Part shown: one piece after another, positions 5,939 to 19,714 of the stretch | How the letters are laid out: every line of letters starts with the position of its first letter | Position numbering within the stretch: position 1 is the first letter of the stretch | Virus record (IMG/VR): IMGVR_UViG_3300035156_000206 | Location: 1-64,000 of that record | Strand: one strand, 5' to 3' | Length of the DNA: 64,000 bases | Made by a program: the position numbers and the translations under genes | The notes under the pieces: model-generated | The model's database searches: none | What the model saw: the letters and a program-made list of their open reading frames with translations, nothing else | What the model was told of the DNA's origin: nothing

Positions 5939-5998
5939 AGAAATTGTTGCCATCTCCTTCAATAAATCAGAGGCCTACGCAGCGCTTCACTAATGACA

Positions 5999-6115: not shown

Positions 6116-6862
6116 TTACAGACCGTGCTTGATGATCAGGCCGAACACTTCGTCCAGGGACGAGACCTCATTCACCTTGATGCTGACCTGGCGTCCGCCG
6201 GCCATCGGGAACGTCATTTCGTAGCGCGGGATGTGCGTGGCTTCGCCGATGCGATCCATGTGGTTGGGCAACTGTTGAACCGGTGCCTTTGCAACAGGAG
6301 CAGCATGCGCGCCAGAGATGGTTTCCTTGTTCTCGGCCTTGCGAGCGAGACGTTCAGCCTTCTTCGATGCCGATTCAGCTTCTTCGGCCGAGCGGTGCAT
6401 ATTCTTCTGGTACGACACTTTGCTCTTGGCCGATGTGATGGCGCGCTGATGAGTGCCGAGTTGTTCTGGCGACATGTCAGCCGTTGGAATCGCTTGCAGT
6501 GCCAGCAGGGCCGTTTGTGCTGCTTCCATCTTCGGCTTGATCTCTGCTGCGGTGGTTGTTTTGCGTGCCATGGTATTTCCTTTCGTCATTTGAGTGGAGT
6601 GTGTCCAACCCGTTGGAGGTGTGTACTCGGTCTCTGTTCCAAGTTCACTATTAATCACGATACCCAATGTATCGCGTACATGCTCCCGCGCCTTTGTCAG
6701 GTTCGGGAAAGGCTGATCGTCTACCGTCCAGCGCTTCTCCGGATGAGGCATACGTACCCCATCCGAAGTCTCCCCACGAACAATGAACTGGTCAATGTCC
6801 GGGAAGGAGCCATAGCGCTTATTGGGAAACAACCTTATTGCTGTAGTCGCACTGTTCTTCAA
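6116..6862 (-). CDS. Hypothetical protein with possible internal start MARKTT at 6571
   Basis: 248-aa ORF; promoter TTGATT-17-TATAAT near 6910-6938; internal RBS TGACGAAAGGA. Confidence 0.75.
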   Translation of the reverse strand: MKNSATTAIRLFPNKRYGSFPDIDQFIVRGETSDGVRMPHPEKRWTVDDQPFPNLTKAREHVRDTLGIVINSELGTETEYTPPTGWTHSTQMTKGNTMARKTTTAAEIKPKMEAAQTALLALQAIPTADMSPEQLGTHQRAITSAKSKVSYQKNMHRSAEEAESASKKAERLARKAENKETISGAHAAPVAKAPVQQLPNHMDRIGEATHIPRYEMTFPMAGGRQVSIKVNEVSSLDEVFGLIIKHGL

Positions 6863-6933
6863 TATATCCCCTCGTCAGCTATTTTGATCAACGCTTAGTT
6901 GATAAGGCTATTATACTGAAATTTGGAAATTAA

Positions 6934-7620
6934 TCAACTCTTTTTTGTAAGATTGTGGTAATAGGTAGACGCACCAGCTTCTGTCAATCCTGCATCACGA
7001 ACTAGCTTCTTGATGACTGTCTTGCGGCTGCGGTCTTTGTTGCGCTTGATGATCCAGATGGCTTTGTCCTTCTTGGTACCAAATGCAATCTTCTCAGGCA
7101 TAGAGGTAGGAACATGGACTGGCTCCGAAGGAACGAGTCTGGTTTTGCAAGCAACACATTGGTACTTGTCCAACATGATCTTGCGGCGCATGATGCTGGC
7201 GTAGACGTGACTATCGTCGTTGCAAGCACAAAGGAACTTGTAGGTGGTGAACTGACGTTTGCTGATGTTCGTATCCAACCCATGACACCGATCAGGCTTC
7301 AGCCCCATCAGGATCATAATTGCCTTCCATTCCTTACCATGCGCTTGGGTATCATGTCCGTGAATGTGCTCTGTGATGACGTGAGCAACCTCATGAGGTA
7401 CAATTTGGTATAGGAACGCAGAAGGGTACGCACTCAGCAATATGGGATCGAAATTGACATGGTAGTGGATACCACGAGCCCAGCCAGCAGTCGTGTAGCT
7501 ACGCTGGTAGGTGATGATAAGAGGAGGAAGGTTTAAATCAGGATACACTGCCTCCACGCGTGCGATTGAGTCGAGGACGACAGCACGAACTTGGTTGTGG
7601 AGGTCAGGAGGGATGTTCAT
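6934..7620 (-). CDS. SprT-like zinc metalloprotease with Cys cluster and C-terminal repeat-family domain
   Basis: HEVAH (HExxH), HGKEWK, CxC...CxxC; C-terminal GLTEAGASTYYHN. Confidence 0.85.
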   Translation of the reverse strand: MNIPPDLHNQVRAVVLDSIARVEAVYPDLNLPPLIITYQRSYTTAGWARGIHYHVNFDPILLSAYPSAFLYQIVPHEVAHVITEHIHGHDTQAHGKEWKAIMILMGLKPDRCHGLDTNISKRQFTTYKFLCACNDDSHVYASIMRRKIMLDKYQCVACKTRLVPSEPVHVPTSMPEKIAFGTKKDKAIWIIKRNKDRSRKTVIKKLVRDAGLTEAGASTYYHNLTKKS

Positions 7621-7644
7621 GTCCCTATTTATGGGCAACTAATG

Positions 7645-7751
7645 CCATATGGGGTGAGTTGTGGGCCCGTAATTCGCGCTTCATCGCTAGCGCCGCCAAA
7701 GGCGGCAAAGCTTGGTTCGCACTTTTCTGTTTGCACAACCCACCCCATATG
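7645..7751 (-). ncRNA. Candidate ~106-nt structured RNA
   Basis: about 18-bp closing stem CATATGGGGTG-GGTTGTG/CACAACT-CACCCCATATG plus inner hairpins. Confidence 0.65.
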
Positions 7752-7758
7752 ACACTAT

Positions 7759-7898
7759 GTAGATGACTAAAGGGTGGCCACCGAAGGCGCCTGCGAGAAG
7801 GGAAGCCTGACGAAAGGAGGAGGTCTCAGCCCGCCTTGGGGGGAAGGTGGATCTCTACTTTACGCAAGCGGCCTCGGCGCCACTCTTTAATCGACTAC
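7759..7898 (-). ncRNA. 140-nt sRNA with C-rich loops, antisense to early leader/SD
   Basis: promoter 7905-7933 predicts +1 near 7898; ends pair; hairpin contains ACCUCCUCCUUUCGUCAG. Confidence 0.75.
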
Positions 7899-7904
7899 AA
7901 GATC

Positions 7905-7933
7905 ATTTTATCACATACATCGTCAAAAGTCAA
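7905..7933 (-). promoter_or_regulatory. sigma70-type promoter of the 140-nt sRNA
   Basis: TTGACT-17-TAAAAT. Confidence 0.8.
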
Positions 7934-7949
7934 CGATTAATTCTGGGAT

Positions 7950-8213
7950 GAAGATTCAACTAGAGCTACTGCTGATGCAGGACTTAGGTAGCTACTCCCA
8001 GTCGTACACCAGCCTTCGAGTCCATCTCCGCTGACTCGCGCTCGATCCGGCATCCCCTGTCAGGGCCCTTCAACTGATTGGCTGCATGAGTGGTCTCAGT
8101 GTTCACGAACTGGTGCTCTATGCGCGGCACTCAACGAGCCGCAGAACGCGCGTTCATTAGTACTAAGCCCTACAGGCTGACAGGCCTGTTCACTCACTTC
8201 TAGTTGAACCTTC
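7950..8213 (-). ncRNA. Candidate 264-nt multi-helix RNA
   Basis: 15-bp closing helix GAAGGTTCAACTAGA/TCTAGTTGAATCTTC; CCTGTCAG/CTGACAGG; several hairpins; no credible ORF. Confidence 0.7.
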
Positions 8214-8322
8214 TTTATGAGCATGTCTCTATATAATGGCATGCGCATAAAGAAGATCCCTCTTCTTCCTAGTTTCCGTTCTAGGTTATGGGGCACTCCC
8301 CATTCGGTAACTGCAAGTTATT

Positions 8323-8475
8323 TGGTACCGGGGGCAGGCCTCGAACCTGCAAAAAAGCAAACTCAACACGGCCGTGCCTTGTTCGCCCTTACAACCCATG
8401 GCCTCCCCACTCACCTAGTCTAGCTTCACTGAGCAGGTACTAACACAGGGCGTCTACCACTTTCGCCACCCCAGC
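8323..8475 (-). ncRNA. tRNA-Leu-like RNA with about 60 extra nt in the anticodon/variable region
   Basis: GCTGGGG/CCCCGGT acceptor, Leu-type D-arm GGCGAAAGTGGTAGACGC, GCAGG-TTCGAGG-CCTGC T-arm, ACCA; 153 nt. Confidence 0.75.
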
Positions 8476-8483
8476 ATAACTCT

Positions 8484-8645
8484 TTAGTCGACGAGGTCAC
8501 CCGCGTCAACAAAACTTTCACCCCAACGAACCATCAGGCCAAGCAGGAAGCCAACAACGGCACCGATAACAGGCTCTGCCCAGACATAATGTCCAACGAC
8601 GGCACCGAGAGCAGTACTCAACACCAACAGCAAAAATGTCAACAT
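8484..8645 (-). CDS. Small membrane protein, 53 aa
   Basis: hand-translated MLTFLLLVLSTALGAVVGHYVWAEPVIGAVVGFLLGLMVRWGE...; AAGGAG RBS. Confidence 0.65.
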   Translation of the reverse strand: MLTFLLLVLSTALGAVVGHYVWAEPVIGAVVGFLLGLMVRWGESFVDAGDLVD

Positions 8646-8661
8646 GCACTACTCCTTAAAA

Positions 8662-9059
8662 TGGGTCCCCCTTTCGATGACAGGGACTAGTGAACCTTTC
8701 GGCTCAGTAGCGGGGGATTATTTCAACCCTGCAAAGTTAGTTAGGCGTAAGCCGCTACTTTGAATTGTGAGTCGTTTGCATTTACATGCTTGCATCTTTT
8801 CGCCTTACGGCCGAGGATCGCTTCTCGTGTTGTCAACCTACGGTTATCTCACCACGTCGAAACCAGGTCGCCCCCATCAGCTGCACTTTCAGGTCTATGT
8901 CTGGTGTACCAGTCCTGAGAATTGATGTTATCTCATCTTCGAAAGCGCAGTTGGTGGAGGCGGCGGGAATCGAACCCGCGTCCGCAATGCCTTCACTTTG
9001 GCATCTGGATAGGTCTTACCCTACCCCACAACAATGTATCCGTTGATTTCTCAACTGAT
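8662..9059 (-). ncRNA. ssrA: Circularly permuted (two-piece) tmRNA
   Basis: acceptor piece ending GGTTCGATTCCCGCCGCCTCCACCA at 8952 is transcribed before GGGGGCGACCTGGTTTCGAC at 8875; tag ANDSQFKVAAYA at 8741-8779; outer ends approximate. Confidence 0.9.
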
Positions 9060-9065
9060 GAAGCC

Positions 9066-9094
9066 ATTATATAGACTTCTTCAGTTGAAGTCAA
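9066..9094 (-). promoter_or_regulatory. sigma70-type promoter of the tmRNA/ncRNA operon
   Basis: TTGACT-17-TATAAT inside inverted repeat. Confidence 0.8.
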
Positions 9095-9103
9095 CAGTTA
9101 ATT

Positions 9104-9439
9104 TCACAAGAGCTGATCAGCCAGCTTGACCAACTCGGCACGGTCCAGTTCAAACTCCGGACGCAGACGCTCCTGTTTCGACGATTGTGCCTCAGGCCAG
9201 TATGCCAGCTCATGAGGAGTCTTCATGGTCGAATGGTGAATCCCAGCCAAGCGGTTCCACTTCAACTCGGTTGGATGGAAGACCGAGATGATCGCATGCG
9301 ACTGGAAGTCATACGAGTCGCTCTTGATCGAGATGGACAACTTGTGCCCCTTCATTTCGAAAACTTGATGCAGCGTCAATGACTGACGCGCTTTAAGAAT
9401 TTCGTCCTGAATCATTTTGATCTTGGATGCTTTTGCCAT
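9104..9439 (-). CDS. Hypothetical protein
   Basis: 111 aa; downstream of repeat promoter, AAGGAG. Confidence 0.8.
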   Translation of the reverse strand: MAKASKIKMIQDEILKARQSLTLHQVFEMKGHKLSISIKSDSYDFQSHAIISVFHPTELKWNRLAGIHHSTMKTPHELAYWPEAQSSKQERLRPEFELDRAELVKLADQLL

Positions 9440-9455
9440 TTTGTTCTCCTTGGGT

Positions 9456-9503
9456 TTCGTCAGTTGATATAGCTTATTATACTGACTTTTGGAAAAATGT
9501 CAA
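9456..9503 (-). promoter_or_regulatory. Conserved early promoter+leader repeat
   Basis: TTGACA-17-TATAAT...AACTGACGAAA. Confidence 0.9.
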
Positions 9504-9955
9504 CTGGCTTTCCAAGGGTTAGCTTTGGGAATCACTTCGCCATTCTTGACCTTGTAGAACTCGCTACCTTCCTGGCGGTACAGTGGACTGACCTTGGCGT
9601 CAGCTATTTCAGCATTCGCTAAATCGTCCCAGAGAGCTTCCAGGTGCTCGTAGTAGTTCTTCCGGTGATGCTTGCGGTACAGCCGGTTGACGTCTTCCAT
9701 CGTGAAGCCGTGCTTCCGCATGTACGGACCCAACTGGTCAATTGGGTCGCCACCGTCGCAGGCGTAGCCGAGGGCATTATCGGCAGCCTGATAGAGAGCC
9801 TGCAACTTCAGGTCATTGATGGCCTTGCGTTCAGCAGCGGTCTGCCTCTTAGGCGCATCATAGCTTTCGCGCCACGCTTCCACTCCCGATTGGTTCAGGT
9901 TGCGGAAGCGTTTGTAGGTGCCCGATTTATTTGGGACTTGAACGGATGAGCTCAT
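9500..9955 (-). CDS. Hypothetical protein
   Basis: start moved to MSSSVQ, ATGA overlap with upstream stop. Confidence 0.75.
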   Translation of the reverse strand: MSSSVQVPNKSGTYKRFRNLNQSGVEAWRESYDAPKRQTAAERKAINDLKLQALYQAADNALGYACDGGDPIDQLGPYMRKHGFTMEDVNRLYRKHHRKNYYEHLEALWDDLANAEIADAKVSPLYRQEGSEFYKVKNGEVIPKANPWKAS

Positions 9956-10146
9956 GGCGCAGTGTAGGTGAACAAGCACATTGCTTGTTGTTGAAGGACG
10001 GAACGACCACGGTCGCAATTGTTGATCTTGGTGACTGCCGCAATGGCAACCAAAGGATCGTCAAACGCGACGGTGATAGTATGGACAGCAACCTGACCAC
10101 CATTTGGGGTCATGGTAGTGGTCACCAGGATTTGGAATTGGCTCAT
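9952..10146 (-). CDS. Hypothetical protein
   Basis: 64 aa; ATGA overlaps on both sides. Confidence 0.65.
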   Translation of the reverse strand: MSQFQILVTTTMTPNGGQVAVHTITVAFDDPLVAIAAVTKINNCDRGRSVLQQQAMCLFTYTAP

Positions 10147-10715
10147 GCCCAGATCCCCTTGCGCAGGTTGTATTCGTACGTCGTCGCACCTGGCTTCGAC
10201 AACTGGAGTTCTTTCATGAACAGCTCGATGATCTGGTGCTTGTCAGGCATGTTCGCAATGTTCTGCTTGTACAGTGCGATACAGCGGTCTTTCTTCGACA
10301 TGCCACTCGAACGAGCGATGCGTGGCTTCTTGGCTGTGGTACCGAGTTCTTCAGCCGCAATGACTGCTTCAGCGTGCTTCTCGGCAATCACGTCAGGATT
10401 GACCCATGGGTTCTTTGCGAGGAACTCACCAGCCTTCTTCTGCGCCAGAGCAATGGCTTGGTCAATCTCCATGTACTCTTTCATGTTGTAGAAGCGGACC
10501 GATTCCTGGATCAGGTAGCCAAACACCAATTCGGCAACCTTAACATCCTTCGTTTCCACATCCTGCTCCGTGAGCTCCTTGATGTAGGCATCGAAGTTGC
10601 ACTTCAGACCTGCAGCACGCTCAATCAGGTTGTCGCGGACGAAGTACTGTGCCGAAACAAAACTGTCAGTTGGAATGCCCATCGCTTTGATACGTTCAAT
10701 GATTACTGGTACCAT
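10143..10715 (-). CDS. Protein with C-terminal repeat-family domain
   Basis: start moved to MVPVII after AAGGAG; LSKPGATTYEYN motif; promoter at 10753-10780. Confidence 0.8.
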   Translation of the reverse strand: MVPVIIERIKAMGIPTDSFVSAQYFVRDNLIERAAGLKCNFDAYIKELTEQDVETKDVKVAELVFGYLIQESVRFYNMKEYMEIDQAIALAQKKAGEFLAKNPWVNPDVIAEKHAEAVIAAEELGTTAKKPRIARSSGMSKKDRCIALYKQNIANMPDKHQIIELFMKELQLSKPGATTYEYNLRKGIWA

Positions 10716-10821
10716 GATGACTTCTCCTTCGTCGTTGGATTCAATATAGACAATTATACTCACTTTTGGAAAAATGTCAACAGTTGCTTTCCAAATAAAT
10801 AAAGCATCATAGGAGCACACA

Positions 10822-11073
10822 ATGGCAATAGAACCATCCGGCATCATATATTTGTTGAAGAAGATCGAGGTAGCGGCAGATATCGAAACGACACTGGCAG
10901 AGATTTATATCAACCTGCCAACATGCATCAATCGCGCAATTGGAACCCTCCAGTGTACTCAATTAGAAAACGAGTACCGAGGGGTCATGCAGAAACTGAA
11001 GGTCGACTTTGAGTTCGACCTTCATCAAGCTTTCAAAGACCAGGTTGGAAAGATCCTGGCCCGTCCACGTTAA
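10822..11073 (+). CDS. Hypothetical protein, probably late
   Basis: 83 aa; AGGAG RBS; TAAATA at 10796-10801. Confidence 0.65.
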   Translation: MAIEPSGIIYLLKKIEVAADIETTLAEIYINLPTCINRAIGTLQCTQLENEYRGVMQKLKVDFEFDLHQAFKDQVGKILARPR

Positions 11074-11606
11074 TGGACTGTGGTGTTCGGCGGCACTGAA
11101 GCTTCTGGCTCACCATTCTCGGCCCGCTCCTGAGCCGCCCGTCCGGCCATCATCAATGATACGATGGCTGCGACGAGTGGATGCTGCTCGCGCTCCTCTT
11201 CATCATCGTCACCATGAACCATTTGGCAACCAGGGCACCAGCCTTCAGGCTTGTCTTCATCGCCGGCCTTGGTTTTGATCTCGGCCTTCTTGCGAGCCAC
11301 GAATTCGTCAACAGCACCCTTCGTGATGATCTTGTGCTCTTCCAGGATCACGAGCATCTCGCCCATGACTTCGGACACGCCAGCAATCAAGCCAAGTGGC
11401 ATCGCAATTTGTGCGTGCCCGATTTGGTTCATGGTAAGGCCAGGTGGCGCCTGTTCCAGGATGTGTTCCATCGCATCAGCAAACTTCTCATGCAACGCAG
11501 CGGCCCCGGCCGCAACATGCAAGATGCGTTCTTCTTTTGACATACCAGCGAGGAACTCCTCGTGGTCCTTTTTCTGCTCAGCTTGCTTCTCTTTGGTCGT
11601 TGCCAT
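11070..11606 (-). CDS. Hypothetical protein
   Basis: 178 aa; GACGAAAGGG leader; promoter near 11637-11664. Confidence 0.8.
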   Translation of the reverse strand: MATTKEKQAEQKKDHEEFLAGMSKEERILHVAAGAAALHEKFADAMEHILEQAPPGLTMNQIGHAQIAMPLGLIAGVSEVMGEMLVILEEHKIITKGAVDEFVARKKAEIKTKAGDEDKPEGWCPGCQMVHGDDDEEEREQHPLVAAIVSLMMAGRAAQERAENGEPEASVPPNTTVH

Positions 11607-11737
11607 TTTATTCCCTTTCGTCTAAGTGATGTGTTCATTATAGACAGAATTTGTGTAAAGTCAACAGTAATATTGAGATAGCATTATTAAGCAAAAGCTA
11701 TTATAATGAGGGAACTATACAACTTCGGGAGTTTCCC

Positions 11738-11992
11738 ATGTCGCATGCTCTAGTGACCCTCATTGATGAGGTTTTGAAAGACGCTGAGGTTCATGATGTT
11801 GAGGTGTCAATCCAAGTCGACACCGGATCGAAGACGATGGGTGCATCTTATAAGGACGATGTTGGGATGTGCCGCTACTACGTCAATGATATCGATGCCC
11901 TGTGGTATGAGATCCAGAAGGAACTGGAAGGCGAACAAACCTCAATGATCGACGCTTTTTGGTCAATCTTGAATACCGTATATAAGATTTAA
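11738..11992 (+). CDS. Hypothetical protein
   Basis: start moved to MSHALV after GGGAG. Confidence 0.7.
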   Translation: MSHALVTLIDEVLKDAEVHDVEVSIQVDTGSKTMGASYKDDVGMCRYYVNDIDALWYEIQKELEGEQTSMIDAFWSILNTVYKI

Positions 11993-12130
11993 ATGAAAAA
12001 CCATTGAGAAATCTCAAGGGCCTTAGCAGATTACCGTTGATTTCTGATATTTCCACCGTATGATTAAGTTATCAACTCTACCGCACTCAATAGTGGGAGC
12101 GGGGAAGTTACTAACCCAAGGAGAATCAAG

Positions 12131-12463
12131 ATGGCAACCTCGAATCGTAATCACGGCTCTAAAGCACCATTGGTCCCTGAGCCACAGCACACCGGCCGCA
12201 ACGCGGAATCGTTCTCGACGCAGCAAGGCAGCAACAAAGCAGCCATTGCCCGCAAAATCTTTAACGAGATCGGTACCGACCAGCCACGCAAGGCCGTCAT
12301 CGAGCGCTTCCAGTCCGAAGCACACCTGACCCCTGCAGGCGCGGCAACCTACTACCAGAACATGAAAAAAGAAGCCGGCCTCGTCGCAGTTGGCGGCCCA
12401 GGCAACACACGCGCGCAAAACAATGCGCCGGCTGAAGGCGGCGCAGCAACGGCCAAGAAATAA
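12131..12463 (+). CDS. Small basic protein, repeat-family domain
   Basis: 110 aa; LTPAGAATYYQN motif; AAGGAG RBS; terminator follows. Confidence 0.8.
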   Translation: MATSNRNHGSKAPLVPEPQHTGRNAESFSTQQGSNKAAIARKIFNEIGTDQPRKAVIERFQSEAHLTPAGAATYYQNMKKEAGLVAVGGPGNTRAQNNAPAEGGAATAKK

Positions 12464-12509
12464 TTCACTTACCGGTGATTATCTGGCCCCCTTTATGGTG
12501 GCCATGTTT

Positions 12510-12536
12510 GGGGAGACTTCGGTCTCCCCCTTTTTT
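12510..12536 (+). terminator. Rho-independent terminator
   Basis: GGGGAGAC-TTCG-GTCTCCCC then T6. Confidence 0.9.
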
Positions 12537-12545
12537 ATCCCTACT

Positions 12546-12593
12546 GTTGACTTTCTTCCAAATGTCAGTATAATGAAATCATCGACTGACGAA
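12546..12593 (+). promoter_or_regulatory. Conserved early promoter+leader repeat, plus-strand copy
   Basis: TTGACT-17-TATAAT GAAATCATCGACTGACGAAAGGGAG. Confidence 0.9.
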
Positions 12594-12606
12594 AGGGAGA
12601 TACAAA

Positions 12607-12972
12607 ATGAAATTTAGTGACCTCACAAGCGATGTTGCACGGGTAGATTATCTGAAGGCTCAGCTGACCCAGGATGACCGGTTGATCATGCGTTGCCTAT
12701 TGGCAATCTACAATAACCAGACCTTGGATGAACAAAGCTCCAAGACTGTTAACAAGCACAATGGCATCGGCTTTAAGTCGATGGATGCGAAGATCCTCAC
12801 GGAGTATGTACAGACGGCAGAGCGTCGTCGTGTGACTGAGGCTCTGGAGAACAAGAATGTTGAATTCTGCTTGGAGCGTGTACTGTCCGAGAAGCAGGCA
12901 GCATTCCTGCGCCGTGCAATGCCAAAGTATGCCCGTCAACTTTTGAAGGTAATCAAGGAGAAACAAAAATGA
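12607..12972 (+). CDS. Conserved phage hypothetical protein
   Basis: 121 aa; LLAIYNNQT.DEQ...HNGIGF pattern. Confidence 0.8.
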   Translation: MKFSDLTSDVARVDYLKAQLTQDDRLIMRCLLAIYNNQTLDEQSSKTVNKHNGIGFKSMDAKILTEYVQTAERRRVTEALENKNVEFCLERVLSEKQAAFLRRAMPKYARQLLKVIKEKQK

Positions 12973-13250
12973 ACATCACTACCCAGGTAAGTCGTTTGGA
13001 TTCCAAATCTCGCAAAGTTGGTGGCGAGATGCAGCAAAGCACTGCCCACACCATCCAGGTTGATGGCAAAACCTTCCTTCATGGAGGACCTAAGGTAATT
13101 GTGACTGAGTACCCGAATGGGAAGACGACGATCACGGCCACCGAAGCATATGGTCGCATCTACTTGGTAGATGGGAAGGTACATCAATTTGCCTCCGTAC
13201 AAGCAGCAGCAGAAGCGCTGGTTGCAAAGGAGCTGAAACAAACTCCTTGA
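12969..13250 (+). CDS. Hypothetical protein
   Basis: 93 aa; ATGA overlap; AAGGAG. Confidence 0.75.
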   Translation: MNITTQVSRLDSKSRKVGGEMQQSTAHTIQVDGKTFLHGGPKVIVTEYPNGKTTITATEAYGRIYLVDGKVHQFASVQAAAEALVAKELKQTP

Positions 13251-13293
13251 TCTTCAGGACCTACCTCCTCTACAATGCTCCACTTAGTTCCAT

Positions 13294-13301
13294 TATAAAT
13301 A
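13294..13301 (+). promoter_or_regulatory. T4-like late promoter
   Basis: exact TATAAATA ahead of a gene-free hairpin-rich stretch. Confidence 0.6.
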
Positions 13302-13719
13302 TGGGACTACAGTGGATGTTTGTTTTTCGGGCATTATGTTTCCACTATAAAAACATAAAGAACGACGGGCCTTGGAGTAGAGCCCAATAACTACTAACCA
13401 GGTGGGGGATGTGCGAGCGACCCAATCCAACCGCTGTCGTAGCGGCGATTACAAACAGAAATGGGCAGACGGTTTATACATGATTTAGTTCATGCCGGCG
13501 TGACGGTCTCGACGATACAGAGACATGCTGATAAAACACCTTACGACCAAGATTGATCACTTCCAATCTTGAACTAGTTCTTTAGGACAGATTCCTTCTT
13601 CCAGGTTGAATTAATTTAAATTATTCCTTCCTGTTTTTGAAAAGCTCTGACCGGGTCCTAGGCTCATGTCCTGTACCCCTACGGGTTGACAAAAACCTAA
13701 GACTTCAGTATGATGCAAA

Positions 13720-14085
13720 TCAATCCTCCATGTCCTTCCATACCCCGAACTCCACTACCGAGATAGGTTGGCCGTACTCAGTCGCCGATTTGTGCCAGTG
13801 CTCGATCAGACTAACAGGCACATCAGGATATGCAGCCACTACCTGCTCAATAATCAAACTATCAAACAAGTCCTGACGCATCTGGGTCAGATACAGATTG
13901 GCCGTATCCAGAGCCAATGCCTCATCGTCAAATGCCTCACAGGTGTAACCCTTGGCCTGACCGAATGTGCTGGAGGACGACACACGATATGTGGTCCCAG
14001 CTGCACCCTCATACTTCGTGCAAGTAACATGCATCACGGTGTCACCAAACACGTGACTAAATTGCAACAGGGTTGTGGTTTTCAT
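13720..14085 (-). CDS. Hypothetical protein
   Basis: 121 aa; repeat promoter, AAGGAG. Confidence 0.8.
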   Translation of the reverse strand: MKTTTLLQFSHVFGDTVMHVTCTKYEGAAGTTYRVSSSSTFGQAKGYTCEAFDDEALALDTANLYLTQMRQDLFDSLIIEQVVAAYPDVPVSLIEHWHKSATEYGQPISVVEFGVWKDMED

Positions 14086-14095
14086 CTTTTACTCC

Positions 14096-14143
14096 TTCGT
14101 CAGTTGATGTAGTCATTATACTGACTTTTGGAAATTTGTCAAC
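14096..14143 (-). promoter_or_regulatory. Conserved early promoter+leader repeat
   Basis: TTGACA-17-TATAAT...AACTGACGAAGGAG. Confidence 0.9.
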
Positions 14144-14153
14144 GGGATGGGAA

Positions 14154-14336
14154 TTAGACGTTGTCCGCAGGACCAATGATCTGGAAGCCACCTTCAGATA
14201 CCTCAAACTCACATTCGCCATCTGTCAGGTCATCCGAGTAGCTAATGTAGTTGACCACGGAGTCCAACTCCTCATCCGTGCAACCATCCAACAACGCCTT
14301 CAGCTCACGCAGGGTCTTGAAAGTTCCTTCAGCCAT
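14154..14336 (-). CDS. Small acidic hypothetical protein
   Basis: 60 aa; repeat promoter, GGAG. Confidence 0.7.
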   Translation of the reverse strand: MAEGTFKTLRELKALLDGCTDEELDSVVNYISYSDDLTDGECEFEVSEGGFQIIGPADNV

Positions 14337-14347
14337 GATATTCTCCA

Positions 14348-14391
14348 GTAGTTGATGTAGTCATTATACTGACTTTTGGAAATTTGTCAAC
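14348..14391 (-). promoter_or_regulatory. Early promoter repeat (variant leader)
   Basis: TTGACA-17-TATAAT GACTACATCAAC. Confidence 0.85.
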
Positions 14392-14509
14392 GGGAACAAA
14401 TACCAAACGATTTAAACGCGTTATACGCGATTTGTTTTACAATCGGTAAGCAAATGCGATCGACGAAGGAAAACCGTGCAAACGTTGATCTGAACGGTTT
14501 CCGATGTGT

Positions 14510-14785
14510 TTACGTGAGGAGGACAGATAGCGGATCGATGGTCTCGATGTTCAGCTTTGTGAACACGCGTTCCATGAGCTCATCGGTGAGGTCTGGTTGA
14601 TCGGCTCCCCACATGCGGTACACTGTCCAGAAGCGGCCATTGCTTTCTTTCAGGCCGTTGATCAGCCACTCGCAGATCTGGTGCATCAAGTAGCGAGCTT
14701 CTGGTGTGTACTCTGGTGCACCGATCAGTCCGGTCTGGACATCACGGAACACCGCAATCACGTCGTCCTTGCAAGTGGCGATCAT
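14510..14785 (-). CDS. Hypothetical protein
   Basis: 91 aa; ATGA overlap. Confidence 0.75.
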   Translation of the reverse strand: MIATCKDDVIAVFRDVQTGLIGAPEYTPEARYLMHQICEWLINGLKESNGRFWTVYRMWGADQPDLTDELMERVFTKLNIETIDPLSVLLT

Positions 14786-15342
14786 GCTGTTGCCTTATCG
14801 TCTGGGTTGACGTATACTTGCATCAGCAGTTCCCGCGGTTGCATCTTGACCTTTGGGAACAGGGCATTGTGTCCCATGTTGACCACGACCGGCTTGCCAC
14901 AGTGTTCGCCACCAGCAACCACGACGCCGCTTTCGCCAGTATCAATTGTCTTCACGACCATGCCGGCCCACATTGGGAACCGAGGCGGAAGCCACTTGAC
15001 AATATCGGCGGTCCATTCGAACATCTGCAGTGCGGTGATCTTGCCCGCATCATGTGCGTGGAAGTAGTACTCGGCCAGCTCTGGAATGGTGACGCACTCA
15101 TCGACGCCCATGCCATAGTAGCCCATGCCGTACAAGGCATTCAGCCGTTCCGTAACCGATGTGGTCTGGAGGAAGATGTAGGCATCGATTACGTGGAACA
15201 GCTTCTCGTCCGAAAAGAAGTTGCCACGCCACGGCAGACCTTTGATTTGGTCCGAATTGGTGATCACGAGCTCGCCGATTGCATCCAGGCGACGTCGCAT
15301 CTCAGCAGCATTGCCGGTCAGTAGTATGGTCTTGTCAGTCAT
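14782..15342 (-). CDS. Hypothetical protein
   Basis: 186 aa; repeat promoter, GGAG. Confidence 0.8.
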   Translation of the reverse strand: MTDKTILLTGNAAEMRRRLDAIGELVITNSDQIKGLPWRGNFFSDEKLFHVIDAYIFLQTTSVTERLNALYGMGYYGMGVDECVTIPELAEYYFHAHDAGKITALQMFEWTADIVKWLPPRFPMWAGMVVKTIDTGESGVVVAGGEHCGKPVVVNMGHNALFPKVKMQPRELLMQVYVNPDDKATA

Positions 15343-15355
15343 TTTGTATCTCCGT

Positions 15356-15403
15356 TTCGTCAGTTGATGTAATCATTATACTGCTTTTTCCAAAATAGTC
15401 AAC
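15356..15403 (-). promoter_or_regulatory. Conserved early promoter+leader repeat, back-to-back with a + promoter
   Basis: TTGACT-17-TATAAT; shared palindrome GTCAACTGTTGAC. Confidence 0.9.
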
Positions 15404-15433
15404 TGTTGACTTTTCTGAGAATCCAAGTATAAT

Positions 15434-15518
15434 AGACTTACCGTGACCATAGGAGAGGGGAGGTATGGCGATACGGTTCGCAACGGGACACAACAAAAGA
15501 GGACCGAAGTCCTCTTTT
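15434..15518 (+). ncRNA. Three-copy small RNA/peptide cassette, copy A
   Basis: TTGACT-16-TATAAT then AGACTTACCG-N7-AGGAGAG-N4-GGTATGGCGATACGGTTC; terminator 15495-15518. Confidence 0.6.
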
Positions 15519-15520
15519 GG

Positions 15521-15859
15521 TTAGCGGATGATCAGGACCTTCAGGATTGGCTGGTTGCAATATTCTGCAGGCGAATCCAAATCGACCTCCTGGTCTTCGT
15601 CATCCATTGCACCGCGCAGGGCACGTTCAGCTTCTTCGACCTTCTCTTCATCCAGGGTCTGGAACTTCTCTGCGTTCGAGCACCATGCAACTGACTCGAC
15701 CGTAATCTGACCAATCTCCTCAGCCACTTCCGTCCGCCAGTAATCGCCCAGGGGCCGAGCAAAGTGAATTGGATTAGCCAACTCGTCTGGGTCCATTTGG
15801 GCCAACAGATCCATTAGTTGCTTACCGGTGATGGAACCACTTTCGCTGTGACGTGCCAT
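15521..15859 (-). CDS. Hypothetical acidic protein
   Basis: 112 aa; repeat promoter near 15893-15921, AGGAG. Confidence 0.8.
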   Translation of the reverse strand: MARHSESGSITGKQLMDLLAQMDPDELANPIHFARPLGDYWRTEVAEEIGQITVESVAWCSNAEKFQTLDEEKVEEAERALRGAMDDEDQEVDLDSPAEYCNQPILKVLIIR

Positions 15860-15925
15860 TTTAGTTCTCCTGTTTGTTTAGTCAATATAATCATTATACT
15901 GACTTTTGGAAAAATGTCAACGCTG

Positions 15926-16411
15926 TTACTCTGCGTTCCACGAACTGGTTGGCAGACCCACAAATTCGATTTCGTCGCCAATGCGCATATAGCGTTGGAT
16001 GTGGTATTGGTTCATCATGTGATCAAACCACAGGCAGGTGTTGGTACCAACATCAATACCAACAACTTCAAATTCACGGCTGGCGCCGGCCGAGCGTTGC
16101 AGGAAGTAGTCAAGGTGGTCGAATGACTCCACCCGGCCGAGGTCGTACACATGGTCCCCCTGAGCTTCCAGGGCACAGAAGGTCAGCAGTGGTACAGCAT
16201 CATTCTCGCAGCGGATGACCCCGTGCCAATCCTGAGACAACTCAACCGCGCTGATGCCCCATTCACAACCTGGCACATCATGCCAAAGAATTTGGTTCGT
16301 TTCCTGCTTCACGGCAATAGGTTCCATGCCCGTATAACCAGCAGCTTCGAATGCCTGACCTATCATGGCACAGGTCATTTCCTTTTCTACTTCCAGGCGC
16401 TTGAGTTTCAT
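15926..16411 (-). CDS. Hypothetical protein
   Basis: start moved to MKLKRL after repeat leader. Confidence 0.8.
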   Translation of the reverse strand: MKLKRLEVEKEMTCAMIGQAFEAAGYTGMEPIAVKQETNQILWHDVPGCEWGISAVELSQDWHGVIRCENDAVPLLTFCALEAQGDHVYDLGRVESFDHLDYFLQRSAGASREFEVVGIDVGTNTCLWFDHMMNQYHIQRYMRIGDEIEFVGLPTSSWNAE

Positions 16412-16421
16412 TTTATTCCCT

Positions 16422-16469
16422 TTCGTCAGTTGATGCAATCATTATACTGATTTTTCCAAAATTGTCAAC
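16422..16469 (-). promoter_or_regulatory. Conserved early promoter+leader repeat, back-to-back with a + promoter
   Basis: TTGACA-17-TATAAT...AACTGACGAAAGGG. Confidence 0.9.
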
Positions 16470-16526
16470 TGTTGACTTTATTGGCAAATTGTATTATAGT
16501 GTTTACATCAACAATAGGAGATCACA

Positions 16527-16922
16527 ATGCATGTAACAGAACATACGTTGAATGGTGAACGCACCATGACGCCATTCGTCCAGAAGCTGGTTAATGAACT
16601 GGGTGAATGCTGCCGGGAGTACCGCCTCACAGAAGAGGACGACAAGGTCACCTTTGTGTTCCCTTACATGAAGCGTCAGGGCGTGATCATGTACGATGGC
16701 GAGCTGATGTTGCTGGCAGGAGCGTACATCATCAGTTCCGATGACGACACTGAACACTACTTCATCCTTGTTGCTGGCACTATGGACGGGGACTCGTTCT
16801 TGTTCACTCCAGTCGACGAGGTACAAGAAGTCGTTGGGATGGATCTCGGCAACTTGCCTGTCCTCTACATCCAGCAACACGATATCGGCTTCGTCGATAT
16901 GCTGGCTCCACTGGTTAACTAA
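16527..16922 (+). CDS. Hypothetical acidic protein
   Basis: 131 aa; AGGAG RBS; divergent promoter. Confidence 0.75.
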   Translation: MHVTEHTLNGERTMTPFVQKLVNELGECCREYRLTEEDDKVTFVFPYMKRQGVIMYDGELMLLAGAYIISSDDDTEHYFILVAGTMDGDSFLFTPVDEVQEVVGMDLGNLPVLYIQQHDIGFVDMLAPLVN

Positions 16923-16958
16923 ACCAGCGTTGATTATCTCCCTGAAATGGGAGATAAT

Positions 16959-17038
16959 AGACTTACCGGTGAGCAGGAGAGTCGAGGTATGGGGATTCGG
17001 TTCACCCCTGGCAACAAGGAGCAACTGCTCCTTGTTGC
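16959..17038 (+). ncRNA. Three-copy small RNA/peptide cassette, copy B
   Basis: TTGATT-17-GATAAT then AGACTTACCG-N6-AGGAGAG-N4-GGTATGGGGATTCGGTTC; 12-bp hairpin 17011-17038. Confidence 0.6.
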
Positions 17039-17335
17039 TTACTTCTCCTGCGTCTCGGTAACGAACCGCCAGCCTTCCAGCTTAGGAAAGCGTTCAAGCG
17101 TCGCATCGGTCGGCTTCAAGTACCAGTCGGTCTGGTTGGCACCATACAGCGCGGTCGGGGGCCGCTTCTCATGCTGATGCACATACCATTCGGTGGTCTG
17201 CCCACCCAGGTCGACAACCTTCAATATCATGTCTGCCGACATATCAATGCCTTCCTGGTCGGCACCAAAGGACCGGACGCGGTGTTTGTGATCTGTACCA
17301 GAAGCAGCAGTGGCAAGGTTGAGTGTCGTGTTCAT
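17039..17335 (-). CDS. Hypothetical protein
   Basis: 98 aa; GGAGG RBS. Confidence 0.75.
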   Translation of the reverse strand: MNTTLNLATAASGTDHKHRVRSFGADQEGIDMSADMILKVVDLGGQTTEWYVHQHEKRPPTALYGANQTDWYLKPTDATLERFPKLEGWRFVTETQEK

Positions 17336-17391
17336 AGTACCTCCAGCAGATGGAAAAAAGGGAGCCCTCAGGCCCCCTCCTTGTTGGCTTA

Positions 17392-17658
17392 TTAGGCCGT
17401 AGCGCCCTGGCCGATCAGACCAGCTTTGCGCTTGAAGTTCTGCAGGTACGTTGCAGCACCTTTCGGGGTCAGGTCCGCAGCTGCAACAACCAGCTCCAGG
17501 ATCGCCGAACGCTTCGGCACTGGCTGCTCGCTGTAAGCCGCCTGGAAGATTTCAGCAGCCTTGGCTGCCTTCGAAACAGCCACCGGGGTGCTGATCACTT
17601 CAGCAGCGGTGCTCACTGCAGCGGTTGCGACGACTGCTTTGTTGGAGTTCTTTTTCAT
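17392..17658 (-). CDS. Small Ala/Lys-rich protein, repeat-family domain
   Basis: 88 aa; LTPKGAATYLQN motif; promoter near 17718-17745. Confidence 0.8.
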   Translation of the reverse strand: MKKNSNKAVVATAAVSTAAEVISTPVAVSKAAKAAEIFQAAYSEQPVPKRSAILELVVAAADLTPKGAATYLQNFKRKAGLIGQGATA

Positions 17659-17873
17659 GATAGTTTCTCGCTTTCTTGGTTATTCGCATCAGCATTATTG
17701 CTTCAGTCGATATATTCATTATACTTACTTTTCATCTTTTGTCAACAGTTTCTTTTTCGCTGCCACCGGTTCCTGTTAACACTTCTTCCCAACCGATGAG
17801 ATCAGTATACTTGCTTTTCAACTAAAGTCAACGGCATTCCCTTGTTGACTTCTATGGGAAGCCTCCGTATAAT

Positions 17874-17957
17874 AGACTTACCGGTCCCTAGGAGAGAGGT
17901 GGTATGGGGATTTGGTTCAGGCGGGGGAACCTGGACCAAGGACCACGGCCTAGGTGA
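17874..17957 (+). ncRNA. Three-copy small RNA/peptide cassette, copy C
   Basis: TTGACT-17-TATAAT then AGACTTACCG-N6-AGGAGAG-N4-GGTATGGGGATTTGGTTC; 3' end uncertain. Confidence 0.55.
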
Positions 17958-18029
17958 GGTTGCACCAGGACCAAGGTGCTGGCCTATGTTCAACCTGAGC
18001 CAGGACCTAGTGGTGCAGGCTCAAACCAT

Positions 18030-18385
18030 GGTCCTCCACAAATGCCCGACCCCCTGGTCCTACCAGAACCAAGATCCACAATTGGGTTTTGACAACCTGA
18101 AACTAGGTCCTCCACAAATGCCCGACCCCCCTGTACCAAACCACAATTGGGATTTTGAAGACCAAACCACAATTGGGAAAACATGGTACATTGCAATTGG
18201 CCAACCCCCTGCACCAAACCACAATTGGTCAAATGGCACAATTCCACAATTGGGATTTTGGTCGATTTCAAATGGGGGTGGACGGACCGGTCGACAATTG
18301 ACAACTGGTTGTTTCAGAACCACAACAGGAGGATGAGGTACAACTAGGGATGGCACGATATGAACGAACCAGATCCACAAATGGG
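18030..18385. repeat. Iteron-like direct repeats, putative origin or packaging/terminal signal
   Basis: CCACAATTGG at 18076, 18141, 18167, 18219, 18244; 24-bp GGTCCTCCACAAATGCCCGACCCC at 18030 and 18106. Confidence 0.85.
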
Positions 18386-18460
18386 GAATTAGGAAATCAG
18401 AATGGGACACGCAACATGACTTGTGAACCAAGACCATGGTGGTTTGAAACTAGACTGGTA

Positions 18461-18538
18461 GGGGTCGGGGGGTGAGCCTACTGAAATACAGGGGGGTCGG
18501 GGGGGTACGTAATTGCGCCTAACCACGGGGGTCGGGGG
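18461..18538 (+). repeat. Second GGGTCGG/G-tract cluster
   Basis: GGGTCGG at 18462, 18494, 18529 within long G runs. Confidence 0.85.
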
Positions 18539-18708
18539 CCTAGTATTTGGTGTTGGTACGAATCACTTGTCTCTTTCAATCTTGTGCTCGTACCAACTTG
18601 ACATCAACACCGACATATTATTCCAATCATCTAGCGGGTGGTAGGTACCGGACATCAGCGCATATTGAATTAACGTGCTGCATCTAGCCCATATGTTGAT
18701 GTCTGGTA

Positions 18709-18942
18709 TTACGCTACTGCCGAGCCACCTTCACGGGAGGTGACCATGCCGGCCTTGCGACGGCAATTCTGGTAGTAGGTCGAAGCACCCTTCTCGGTCA
18801 GGCCAACTTCTTTCTGCAGGCGCGCCAGGACGATCTTGCGACTGAACCCGATGGTATCAGAGAAGATCTTGGCTGCTTTCACAACTTTACTTTCGCCACG
18901 TGGGGTACGGATTGTGGTCGAATTGGTTGTGGGCTTAGTCAT
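18709..18942 (-). CDS. Small basic protein, repeat-family domain
   Basis: 77 aa; LTEKGASTYYQN motif; GGAG RBS; TTGACT-17-TAGAAT at 19033-19061. Confidence 0.8.
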   Translation of the reverse strand: MTKPTTNSTTIRTPRGESKVVKAAKIFSDTIGFSRKIVLARLQKEVGLTEKGASTYYQNCRRKAGMVTSREGGSAVA

Positions 18943-19132
18943 GGTGGTACTCCTTCAGGGGTTAAATAACAGGGTTTGGGTTATCTACCAGTGGAGGGAA
19001 CGAACGTGTTCTTCCTCCACCGCTAAGTAACCATTCTACTTACTACAAAAACAAAAGTCAAGGAAAACATCGAGTACCTGTTGATTAAAATCAAAATTTA
19101 CTGTAATAAACATTTCCTCTCGGAAACATCCT

Positions 19133-19582: not shown

Positions 19583-19714
19583 CTGTTCACCTGCTAATGT
19601 AATACACTATGATGATCATTATACTGATTTCTTGCTTAAAGTCAACGCTGTTCTCTTAAAAACCTAACTAATATACAATACGAATTCTCAATCGAAATTT
19701 GGAACCATACTATT

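What the first reader, a model, noticed from the sequence alone, without database searches (positions are those of the whole stretch)
6934..18942. Five-member paralogous ~50-aa basic helical domain, free-standing and fused
Seen: the pattern K...A..I.....R..vi..l......LT..GA.TY..N..K occurs in 6934-7620 (fused to SprT protease), 10143-10715 (fused to an unknown domain) and stand-alone in 12131-12463, 17392-17658 and 18709-18942. All lie in the repeat-rich early region. Inference: an HTH-like nucleic-acid-binding module that may read the promoter repeats or iterons; fusion would bring a protease to DNA-bound targets.
Basis: partly seen in the sequence, partly recalled or inferred. Interest (0 to 1): 0.6.

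Follow-up and report, generated by a model that had tools for sequence, protein, structure and literature searches.

The report
Unnamed phage HTH-like domain, seven copies
A T4-like jumbo phage from a soil-crust metagenome carries seven old copies of a small, basic, three-helix domain that probably binds DNA; the domain belongs to a large phage family with no database name and is repeatedly fused to proteases and other enzymes.

Summary
All five window ORFs share a significant ~55-aa domain: each copy left out of the model is recovered at E 2.6e-5 to 1.7e-15 among 5,505 six-frame ORFs, with no false hits. The 292-kb genome holds two more copies outside the window, a second SprT fusion and a winged-helix fusion. 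AlphaFold models of two paralogs give the same confident three-helix bundle. Its best structural neighbours are homeodomains, RecX repeats and bacterial HTH/wHTH cores, but the scores are weak. The domain is basic (median pI 9.7). It has no Pfam, NCBIfam or annotated PHROG model, yet matches 2,955 cluster representatives among 1.84 billion proteins. It often occurs in tandem. Confirmed fusion partners are SprT proteases (six cases), ADP-ribosyltransferases and MuF head proteins; winged-helix and H1-like lysine-rich partners match only below Pfam cut-offs. Other large phages also carry 4-6 copies. The seven copies are ancient paralogs. The "47-bp repeat" is a sigma-70 consensus early promoter cassette, absent from other phages that carry the domain, and the putative recognition helix is nearly invariant. 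The domain is therefore most likely a general DNA- or nucleoid-tethering HTH, not a reader of this window's repeats. DNA binding is untested.

The parts
6934..7620 (-). Gene p1: full-length SprT-family Zn metalloprotease (HEVAH...HGKEW motif, CxC...CxxC zinc ribbon) with a C-terminal HTH-like domain. The ATG at 7620 is the preferred start; a TTG at 7638 is also open.
   Evidence: ORF. Pfam SprT-like, E 1.9e-12. NCBIfam NF003421, E 1.7e-25, covering 7-165 of 170 model positions.
6937..7101 (-). HTH-like domain of p1 (about 55 aa, pI 10.3, net charge +10).
   Evidence: (left out: E 6.6e-11).
10143..10715 (-). Gene p2 (190 aa): a conserved all-helical N-terminal domain of unknown function (residues 1-101), a linker, and a C-terminal HTH-like domain.
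   Evidence: P0016; 18 homologs with 1-3 C-terminal domain copies; AF2, mean pLDDT 84.
10146..10319 (-). HTH-like domain of p2.
   Evidence: left out: E 2.6e-5; helices 141-152, 159-170 and 174-185. RecX Z 5.6 and 5.4, other HTH cores Z 4.2-4.9.
10753..10780 (-). Sigma-70 consensus promoter (TTGACA-16-TATAAT, 12 of 12) directly upstream of p2.
12131..12463 (+). Gene p3: free-standing 110-aa basic protein (pI 10.0). The domain is at 12212-12379. A weaker promoter lies at 12037-12064, and a strong intrinsic terminator at 12510-12529.
   Evidence: (left out: E 1.3e-14).
17392..17658 (-). Gene p4: free-standing 88-aa basic protein (pI 9.9). The domain is at 17419-17595. A 12-of-12 sigma-70 promoter lies at 17718-17745.
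   Evidence: (left out: E 3.9e-13).
18709..18942 (-). Gene p5: free-standing 77-aa basic protein (pI 10.6). The domain is at 18748-18912. A promoter (TTGACT-17-TAGAAT) lies at 19033-19061.
   Evidence: left out: E 1.7e-15; AF2: helices 19-29, 35-46 and 50-64, core pLDDT above 90.

Best explanation
The five ORFs, together with two more outside the window, share one homologous ~55-aa domain. It is a basic three-helix bundle of the helix-turn-helix type and belongs to a large, phage-borne family that has no name in the databases. I propose that it works as a portable DNA (nucleoid) anchor. On this reading, helix 3 (G-A-x-T-Y-Y-Q-N-x-K-K), the conserved K before helix 1 and the R-K at the start of helix 2 contact DNA. 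The contact would have little sequence specificity, or one target common to all copies. This follows from the surface being nearly invariant among paralogs and among unrelated phages. The free-standing forms (p3, p4, p5) would then be small early DNA-coating or nucleoid-associated proteins. In the fusions, the domain would tether an effector to DNA. The effectors are two SprT metalloproteases, a conserved helical domain of unknown function and a winged-helix domain; in other phages they include ADP-ribosyltransferases and MuF head proteins with a C-terminal metalloprotease-like region. For SprT this would mimic the DNA-dependent protease SPRTN, so that proteins sitting on or crosslinked to DNA are cleaved. 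Six of the seven genes have their own sigma-70-type promoter, so host RNA polymerase should transcribe them immediately after infection.

Shown: homology, copy number, the predicted fold, the positive charge, the architectures, the promoters and the age of the paralogs. Inferred: DNA binding, low specificity, the tethering role and early timing.
For: Homology: leave-one-out HMMs recover every copy with no false hits, and the genome holds seven copies.

Fold: AF2 models of p5 and p2 both give three helices at pLDDT above 90. Foldseek's best PDB matches are homeodomains bound to DNA (probability 0.8-0.95, TM by target up to 0.68). VIA-align lists RecX repeats, transposase, IclR, Lrp, IdeR, LexA and FtsK-gamma HTH cores at Z 4.2-5.6, rmsd 2.4-3 A over 45-55 residues.

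Sequence link to the HTH clan: sub-threshold Pfam hits over helix 2-3 in homologs, including HTH_IclR at a whole-protein E of 6.5e-12 in the four-repeat protein P0124.

Charge and conservation: median pI 9.67, with 96% of 266 domain instances net positive. The most conserved positions are K7, A11, R24, K25, L37, T38, G41, A42, T44, Y45, K50 and K51.

Company kept:
- SprT-like protease in six proteins: two in this genome, plus L018, L012, P0176 and AHP1_1011 of Aeromonas phage Ahp1.
- Winged helix (every hit is below its Pfam cut-off).
- An H1/HC2-like K/A-rich tail (also below cut-off).
- ADP-ribosyltransferases.
- MuF plus a metalloprotease-like C-terminal region.
- Arg/Lys-rich linkers in tandem-repeat proteins.

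Both SprT genes of this genome are fused to the domain. SPRTN is DNA-dependent (PMC7534798).

Promoters.

A multi-copy state recurs: G001 has 5-6 copies, Aeromonas phage Ahp1 has 4-5 and Vibrio phage Bakedbeans has 5.

The paralogs are old and separately conserved.
Against: No DNA-binding experiment or DNA-complex model exists. The structural matches are weak (Z at most 5.6, Foldseek E about 0.5), and three-helix bundles are common and are also used for protein binding. No window copy reaches any Pfam HTH model. An almost invariant helix-3 surface across phages of presumably different hosts fits a conserved host protein as well as it fits DNA. Full-length p2 is acidic (pI 5.4), and copy 6 has long acidic stretches. 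Expression timing is inferred from promoters only, because no RNA data exist.
Confidence: 0.55

Rival explanations
1. The domain is a protein-protein docking module. Its conserved helix-3 face binds one conserved host protein, for example a part of RNA polymerase, sigma-70 or a nucleoid protein. The free-standing copies would act as inhibitors or adaptors, and the fusions would deliver proteases or ADP-ribosyltransferases to that protein.
For: Helix 3 is nearly invariant across ancient paralogs and across phages. Some partners are ADP-ribosyltransferases; in T4, enzymes of that kind modify RNA polymerase (my own knowledge; the jumbo-phage review PMC7824862 discusses them as hijacking factors). 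The same review describes T4 AsiA and gp33 as HTH-type proteins that bind polymerase or sigma rather than DNA. There is one weak Sigma70_r4_2 hit (E 0.0069).
Against: A consistently strong positive charge. Association with H1-like K/A-rich tails, Arg/Lys-rich linkers and wHTH-like regions. The tandem 2-4 repeats are typical of DNA-binding arrays. No partner has been identified, and the hosts of the family members are probably diverse.
Confidence: 0.25
2. One reading: the paralogs are sequence-specific regulators that read this phage's own repeats, namely the 47-bp promoter cassette, the CCACAATTGG iterons or the GGGTCGG repeats.
For: p4 and p5 flank the 700-bp non-coding stretch that holds five CCACAATTGG copies. 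The promoter spacer (TTTCCAAAAGTCAG) and the leader are conserved beyond what sigma-70 needs, so some factor may bind there.
Against: The repeat is a 12-of-12 sigma-70 promoter, explained by host polymerase and by PeSL-type cassettes (PMC2839356, PMC4122927). The cassette is absent from G001, G002, G004 and G005, and CCACAATTGG occurs once at most there, although all four carry the domain with the same helix 3. Paralogs that read different sites should differ in the recognition helix, but that helix is their most conserved part. Each paralog has orthologs in other phages.
Confidence: 0.1
3. The similarity is chance or low-complexity composition, or the small ORFs are not genes.
For: The free-standing ORFs are short and have Ala/Thr/Lys-rich tails.
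Against: Leave-one-out E-values reach 1e-15 with zero false hits. There are 987 database clusters at E<=1e-10. The models have a confident fold. Each ORF has its own promoter and, except p4, a clear Shine-Dalgarno sequence. Orthologs exist in other phages.
Confidence: 0.01

Closest known systems
Tri-helical helix-turn-helix DNA-binding domains (homeodomain-like; cores of LuxR/GerE, IclR-N and sigma-70 region 4)
   Same: Three helices of the same lengths and order, with a sharp turn containing G-L-T between helices 2 and 3. A small-residue pair (G-A) starts helix 3, and polar or basic residues lie on helix 3. A basic arm precedes helix 1. Solved homeodomains and HTH cores are the best structural matches, and the Pfam HTH-clan hits are sub-threshold.
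   Different: No window copy reaches any Pfam, NCBIfam or PDB sequence model. Structural scores are only Z 4-5.6. The signature K-x3-A-x2-I-F...R-K-x-V-I...G-L-T-x2-G-A-x-T-Y-Y-Q-N-x-K-K belongs to this family alone. Helix 3 is almost invariant, whereas recognition helices of regulator families vary.
RecX (three tandem three-helix repeats; regulator of RecA filaments)
   Same: RecX gives the top VIA-align matches for the p2 domain (Z 5.6 and 5.4, rmsd 2.6-2.9 A over 46-50 residues) and ranks fourth for p5. RecX consists of tandem repeats of such a unit, as do many members of this family (2-4 copies).
   Different: There is no sequence match to RecX models. The scores tie with many other HTH cores. 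The window proteins have single copies.
SPRTN/Wss1-type DNA-dependent proteases and bacterial SprT
   Same: p1 and genomic copy 7 have a complete SprT protease with the HExxH...H motif and a zinc ribbon, followed by an added basic module. SPRTN likewise couples the protease to DNA-binding regions and is switched on by DNA (PMC7534798, PMC7826251).
   Different: The added module is unrelated to SPRTN's zinc-binding and basic regions. There are no ubiquitin, PCNA or p97 motifs. DNA dependence is untested here. A jumbo-phage survey noted 1-3 SprT copies in group 2.2 phages and proposed host proteins as targets; the passages returned by my term search do not mention an HTH fusion (PMC7824862).
DNA-binding 'header' domains of phage and plasmid polyvalent or MuF effector proteins
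   Same: In other phages the domain sits in MuF head proteins next to a metalloprotease-like C-terminal region, and in front of ADP-ribosyltransferase domains. That matches the theme of effectors combined with DNA-binding domains (PMC5512222).
   Different: In this window the genes are small, early-promoter-driven units and not giant virion proteins. The survey mentions only unspecified 'other HTH domains'.

Membership tests
Helix-turn-helix superfamily (tri-helical class) | Three-helix bundle with a tight turn between helix 2 and the recognition helix 3 | tested here: met
   AF2 model of p5: helices 19-29, 35-46 and 50-64. AF2 model of p2: helices 141-152, 159-170 and 174-185. The core pLDDT is above 90 in both.
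Helix-turn-helix superfamily (tri-helical class) | Significant structural similarity to solved HTH domains | tested here: inconclusive
   Foldseek top 50 are almost all homeodomains, but at E about 0.5-1. VIA-align gives Z 4.2-5.6 against RecX, transposase, IclR, Lrp, IdeR and LexA cores. This is below the level that excludes a merely common helical arrangement.
Helix-turn-helix superfamily (tri-helical class) | Sequence-profile match to an HTH-clan family above its curated threshold | tested here: not met
   No window copy matches. Homologs give only sub-threshold hits to GerE, HTH_10, Sigma70_r4_2 and WH_Rok. HTH_IclR reaches a whole-protein E of 6.5e-12 in the four-repeat protein P0124, but no single stretch passes.
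Helix-turn-helix superfamily (tri-helical class) | Binds nucleic acid through helix 3 | not testable with these tools
   Indirect support only: basic charge and conserved T, Y, Q, N and K on helix 3, and fusion partners that act on or near DNA.
Homeodomain (Pfam PF00046) | Match to the family profile | tested here: not met
   One of 62 members hits at E 0.16. The resemblance is structural only.
SprT-like zinc metalloprotease (p1 and genomic copy 7) | Pfam PF10263 above the gathering score; HExxH plus a downstream His; C-terminal zinc ribbon | tested here: met
   47.4 bits (cut-off 25.6) for p1 and 32-34 bits for copy 7. The motifs HEVAH...HGKEW and HELAH...HGARW, and CxC...CxxC and CxxC...CxxC, are read.
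SprT-like zinc metalloprotease (p1 and genomic copy 7) | Equivalog of E. coli SprT (NCBIfam NF003421 cut-off) | tested here: not met
   89.5 bits against a cut-off of 175, although the match covers 7-165 of 170 model positions. p1 is a homolog, not an equivalog.
DNA-dependent (SPRTN/Wss1-like) protease | Protease activity switched on by DNA | not testable with these tools
   Inferred only from the recurrent fusion to the HTH-like domain.
PeSL promoter-terminator cassettes of T4-like phages (the '47-bp repeat') | Repeated sigma-70-type early promoter, with an adjacent stem-loop, between small genes of a variable region in a T4-like genome | tested here: met
   There are 22 exact TTGACW-N16-17-TATAATG sites in the genome, 15 of them in the window, of which 14 lie in 1-20 kb. 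Seven are 12-of-12 promoters within 6-20 kb. GC-rich hairpins (AAAGGACCCGAAGGTCCTT) abut three cassettes at 1393, 2563 and 5167. The genome is T4-like (Gp23, E 1e-92). A stem-loop was not checked at every cassette.

The most novel reading that the evidence does not exclude
The domain is not a plain DNA binder. Instead it is a phage-wide mimic or partner of the host transcription machinery: a sigma-region-4-like HTH that recognises the -35 hexamer or docks on RNA polymerase. On this reading, a set of anciently diverged early proteins, together with the SprT proteases and ADP-ribosyltransferases fused to them, is delivered to host polymerase at consensus promoters to take over or dismantle host transcription.
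Probability: 0.07. Interest if true: 0.8.

Novelty: new member of a known kind. Interest (0 to 1): 0.45.

Why it matters
This domain is carried by about 3,000 protein clusters, almost all labelled 'hypothetical' and largely from phage records and metagenomic contigs. It recurs in 4-7 copies per large phage genome, yet it has no entry in Pfam or NCBIfam and no annotated PHROG. Naming it would annotate many early genes at once. Its fusions to SprT proteases, ADP-ribosyltransferases and MuF-linked metalloprotease-like regions suggest a common way by which phages aim enzymes at the host chromosome or its bound proteins in the first minutes of infection. The SprT fusion gives a simple, testable bacterial-virus counterpart of DNA-dependent proteolysis by SPRTN. 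Two cultured phages carry the family (Aeromonas phage Ahp1_CNU-2021 and Vibrio phage Bakedbeans), so experiments do not depend on the uncultured source phage.

Tried and rejected
- Megablast of 6-20 kb against 50,697 phage records: no match.
- tblastn of p5 against phages: no match. With P0037 as query, two isolates appeared.
- Profile search of PDB sequences: only chance hits to antibody CDR-H2 'TYYNQKFKG'.
- Pfam, NCBIfam and PHROG scans of the free-standing copies: nothing.
- ESM Atlas by features: only unnamed clusters scoring below 0.9.
- Phage T4 itself: no copy at E<=1, so no T4 genetics can be borrowed.
- The N-terminal domain of p2: no convincing structural match. It was not folded alone.
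- An eye resemblance of the N-termini of L010, L011 and L017 to SAP/Rho-N motifs was not confirmed by Pfam.
The narrow pattern from A1 found only four loci, so nothing can be said about the family's frequency in cellular genomes.
- Sequencing runs: only two biocrust metagenome DNA runs and no RNA. Read laying was therefore not used, and expression is unverified.
- Recent duplication as the origin of the copies is rejected: the seven copies are never sisters in the tree.

Full report
**1. The observation**

The five ORFs are present as described. Their C-terminal or central ~55 residues align with the invariant residues K, L, G-A-x-T-Y and N.

To test against chance, I built HMMs from four copies at a time. 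I searched them against all 5,505 stop-to-stop ORFs of at least 30 aa in the six frames of the whole genome. Every left-out copy was recovered, at E 6.6e-11 (p1), 2.6e-5 (p2), 1.3e-14 (p3), 3.9e-13 (p4) and 1.7e-15 (p5). The only other hits below E=10 were two further copies.

The window is the first 64 kb of a 291,967-bp linear virus record that is 84% complete. The two extra copies lie near its other end.
- G000:C1:274289-275155(-) is a 285-aa protein. It has an N-terminal winged-helix region with MarR, TrmB and Fe_dep_repress hits just below their cut-offs, acidic linkers and the domain.
- G000:C1:280217-281062(-) is a 277-aa second SprT-like protease with the domain at its C-terminus.

The genome therefore has seven copies. 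Its only two SprT genes are both fused to the domain.

**2. What kind of genome and region this is**

The phage has a T4-type major capsid protein (Pfam Gp23, E 1e-92). Its DNA is found in a biocrust metagenome, and no RNA data exist.

The "47-bp repeat" is, read on the coding strand, TTGACA-16 nt-TATAAT followed by a conserved leader and a Shine-Dalgarno sequence.
- Seven sites are 12-of-12 consensus promoters and eight are 11-of-12 within 6-20 kb. In total 38 promoter-like sites were found there, against 14.9 +/- 3.8 in shuffled sequence.
- The genome has 22 exact TTGACW-N16-17-TATAATG sites. Fourteen lie in 1-20 kb, one more at 41.7 kb, and four in the last 20 kb plus one at 228 kb.
- GC-rich hairpins abut some cassettes.

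This is the composite promoter/terminator cassette (PeSL) described for variable regions of T4-like phages. There it is read by host polymerase and serves as a recombination point (PMC2839356, PMC4122927).

Six of the seven domain genes have such a promoter within 120 nt upstream; p1 has a weaker one about 270-310 nt upstream. They are thus most likely early genes, although this is inferred from the promoters alone.

**3. The fold**

With a 62-sequence alignment, AlphaFold2 models p5 as a disordered basic arm followed by three helices (19-29, 35-46 and 50-64) with pLDDT about 90. An independent model of p2, built from 19 sequences, gives the same three helices at 141-185. It also gives a separate confident helical N-terminal domain.

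- Foldseek against the PDB returns almost only DNA-bound homeodomains: E 0.5-1, probability 0.8-0.95, rmsd 2.2-3 A over about 50 residues.
- VIA-align against 48,161 chains gives Z 4-5.6. The hits are RecX repeats, MATalpha2, transposase HTHs, and IclR, Lrp, IdeR, LexA, ArgR, FtsK-gamma and small-terminase HTH cores.
- These scores are in the range the tool itself calls common for helical domains. They establish the topology, not a specific relationship.
- In the viral structure library, the best nine matches (probability 1.00, 22-35% identity) are uncharacterized phage proteins, among them one of Agrobacterium jumbo phage Atu_ph07. Homeodomain proteins follow.

**4. The family**

No Pfam, NCBIfam or PHROG model matches the free-standing copies.

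- A word-based search found 63 relatives, all unnamed or misnamed.
- The exhaustive profile search found 2,955 cluster representatives at E<=1e-3 and 987 at E<=1e-10 among 1.84 billion.
- Among the 201 retrieved proteins, 60 have two to four tandem copies. In 71 the domain sits at the C-terminal end of a longer protein.

The fusion partners are as follows.
- SprT-like protease: six independent proteins.
- The helical N-terminal domain of p2: 18 proteins, with one to three domain copies.
- Winged-helix regions, with every hit below its Pfam cut-off.
- K/A-rich tails resembling histone H1/HC2 (32.4 bits against a cut-off of 40), and Arg/Lys-rich linkers.
- ADP-ribosyltransferase exoenzyme domains: E 2e-21 to 3e-29 in three proteins.
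- Phage Mu F head protein with a C-terminal region weakly similar to the anthrax lethal-factor-type metalloprotease family, below the Pfam cut-off.

Several homologs give sub-threshold hits to HTH-clan Pfam families exactly over helix 2-turn-helix 3. One four-repeat protein reaches a whole-protein E of 6.5e-12 for HTH_IclR.

The domain is basic. Over 266 instances the median pI is 9.67 and 96% are net positive. The most conserved columns are the K before helix 1, A-x2-I-F in helix 1, R-K at the start of helix 2, L-T in the turn, and G-A-x-T-Y-Y-Q-N-x-K-K in helix 3.

**5. Copy number and age**

The multi-copy state is not peculiar to this phage.
- A 150-kb viral contig has five or six copies within 10 kb, again including SprT, wHTH and p2-type fusions.
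- Aeromonas phage Ahp1_CNU-2021 (Straboviridae) has four or five copies, and Vibrio phage Bakedbeans has five. All are annotated as hypothetical.
- Small phages of about 40 kb have one copy. In two of them it lies two genes upstream of the large terminase.
- T4 has none.

In a maximum-likelihood tree of 65 domains, the seven copies of this genome are never sisters. p2, p3 and p5 each fall into a well-supported group (starred branches) with proteins from other phages. p4 does so with weaker support (93/83). The tree rests on 56 columns and is rough, but well-supported branches force at least four separate origins. The copies are therefore ancient, separately retained paralogs and not a recent burst.

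**6. Does it read the repeats?**

The promoter cassette is absent from four other viral records that carry the domain with the same helix 3. CCACAATTGG occurs at most once there, a single copy in G001, which is what the backward-read control also gives.

Paralogs that had specialised on different DNA sites should differ most in the recognition helix. Here that helix is the most conserved element. The cassette is fully explained as a sigma-70 promoter.

The conserved promoter spacer and leader remain unexplained, however, and p4 and p5 do flank the iteron stretch.

**7. Best explanation and rivals**

I propose that the domain is a general DNA- or nucleoid-tethering HTH. It is used alone as a small basic early protein, and as an anchor for effectors. 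The SprT fusions are the clearest case, by analogy with the DNA-dependent protease SPRTN (PMC7534798). A survey of jumbo phages had noted 1-3 SprT copies in T4-related 'group 2.2' phages and suggested host proteins as targets. The passages my term search returned do not mention an HTH fusion (PMC7824862).

Confidence that the family is homologous and helical is very high. Confidence that it is HTH-like is about 0.85. Confidence that it binds nucleic acid with low or shared specificity is about 0.55.

The main rival (0.25) is that the invariant surface docks on a conserved host protein such as RNA polymerase. T4 AsiA and gp33, both HTH-type proteins, bind polymerase or sigma in this way.

**8. 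Novelty**

The fold class is known. The family, its expansion and its architectures are not named in the libraries searched or in the papers read (PMC5512222 mentions only 'other HTH domains' in polyvalent proteins). I classify the finding as a new member of a known kind, of moderate interest.

Noticed in passing
window 8650-9044 (-): A phage-encoded tmRNA of the permuted (two-piece) type. ARAGORN gives the tag peptide ANDSQFKVAAYA. Rfam RF04321 scores 108 bits (gathering score 47) at 8747-9011. It lies between the SprT-fusion gene and p2.
   Followed up: partly
window 2477-5827 (-): A cluster of six tRNA genes (Met x2, Thr, Arg, Ser x2), interleaved with the same promoter cassettes.
   Followed up: no
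window 1349-19652; genome-wide 22 sites: The '47-bp repeat' is a sigma-70 consensus promoter (TTGACA-16-TATAAT). Its spacer (TTTCCAAAAGTCAG) and leader (ATCAACTGACGAAAGGAG) are unusually conserved. Three copies abut GC-rich hairpins (1393, 2563, 5167). This is PeSL-like. The conservation of the spacer and leader is itself unexplained.
   Followed up: partly
window 17850-18545: A roughly 700-bp stretch without a convincing gene lies between p4 and p5. It has five CCACAATTGG copies (18076-18253) inside longer ACCAAACCACAATTGGGA units and is followed by GGGGTCGGGG repeats (18453-18540). Similar G-rich repeats occur at 1-180 and 21576. It may be a replication origin or a protein-binding array.
   Followed up: no
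window 16954-17024 and 17869-17939: Two 71-nt segments, 77% identical, each begin right at a plus-strand sigma-70-like promoter (16930-16958, a weak 9-of-12 match, and 17845-17873). They may be a pair of small RNA genes. There is no Rfam match at gathering score.
   Followed up: no
window 22001-24000: A very strong local GC skew (+0.40) and AT skew (-0.21), after mostly negative skew from 2 to 22 kb. It marks the border of the minus-strand early region.
   Followed up: no
L009:2089-4158 (+), and proteins P0182, P0135, P0138, P0199: In other phages the same domain is embedded in large proteins. In one type, a Mu F-like head protein is followed by the domain and a C-terminal metalloprotease-like region (HExxH, with weak Pfam ATLF similarity). 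In the other, one or two domain copies precede an ADP-ribosyltransferase exoenzyme domain.
   Followed up: partly
L017:2785-3105 and L011:2533-3183: In two phages of about 40 kb, the single domain-bearing gene lies two genes upstream of the large terminase. The unassigned 196-228-aa gene between them could be a small terminase. By eye, its N-terminus resembles a SAP/Rho-N motif, but Pfam does not confirm this.
   Followed up: partly
window 10347-10715 (-) (p2 residues 1-123): A conserved all-helical N-terminal domain (AF2 pLDDT about 90) with no Pfam match and no convincing PDB neighbour. In 18 retrieved proteins it always precedes one to three copies of the HTH-like domain. Its function is unknown.
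   Followed up: partly
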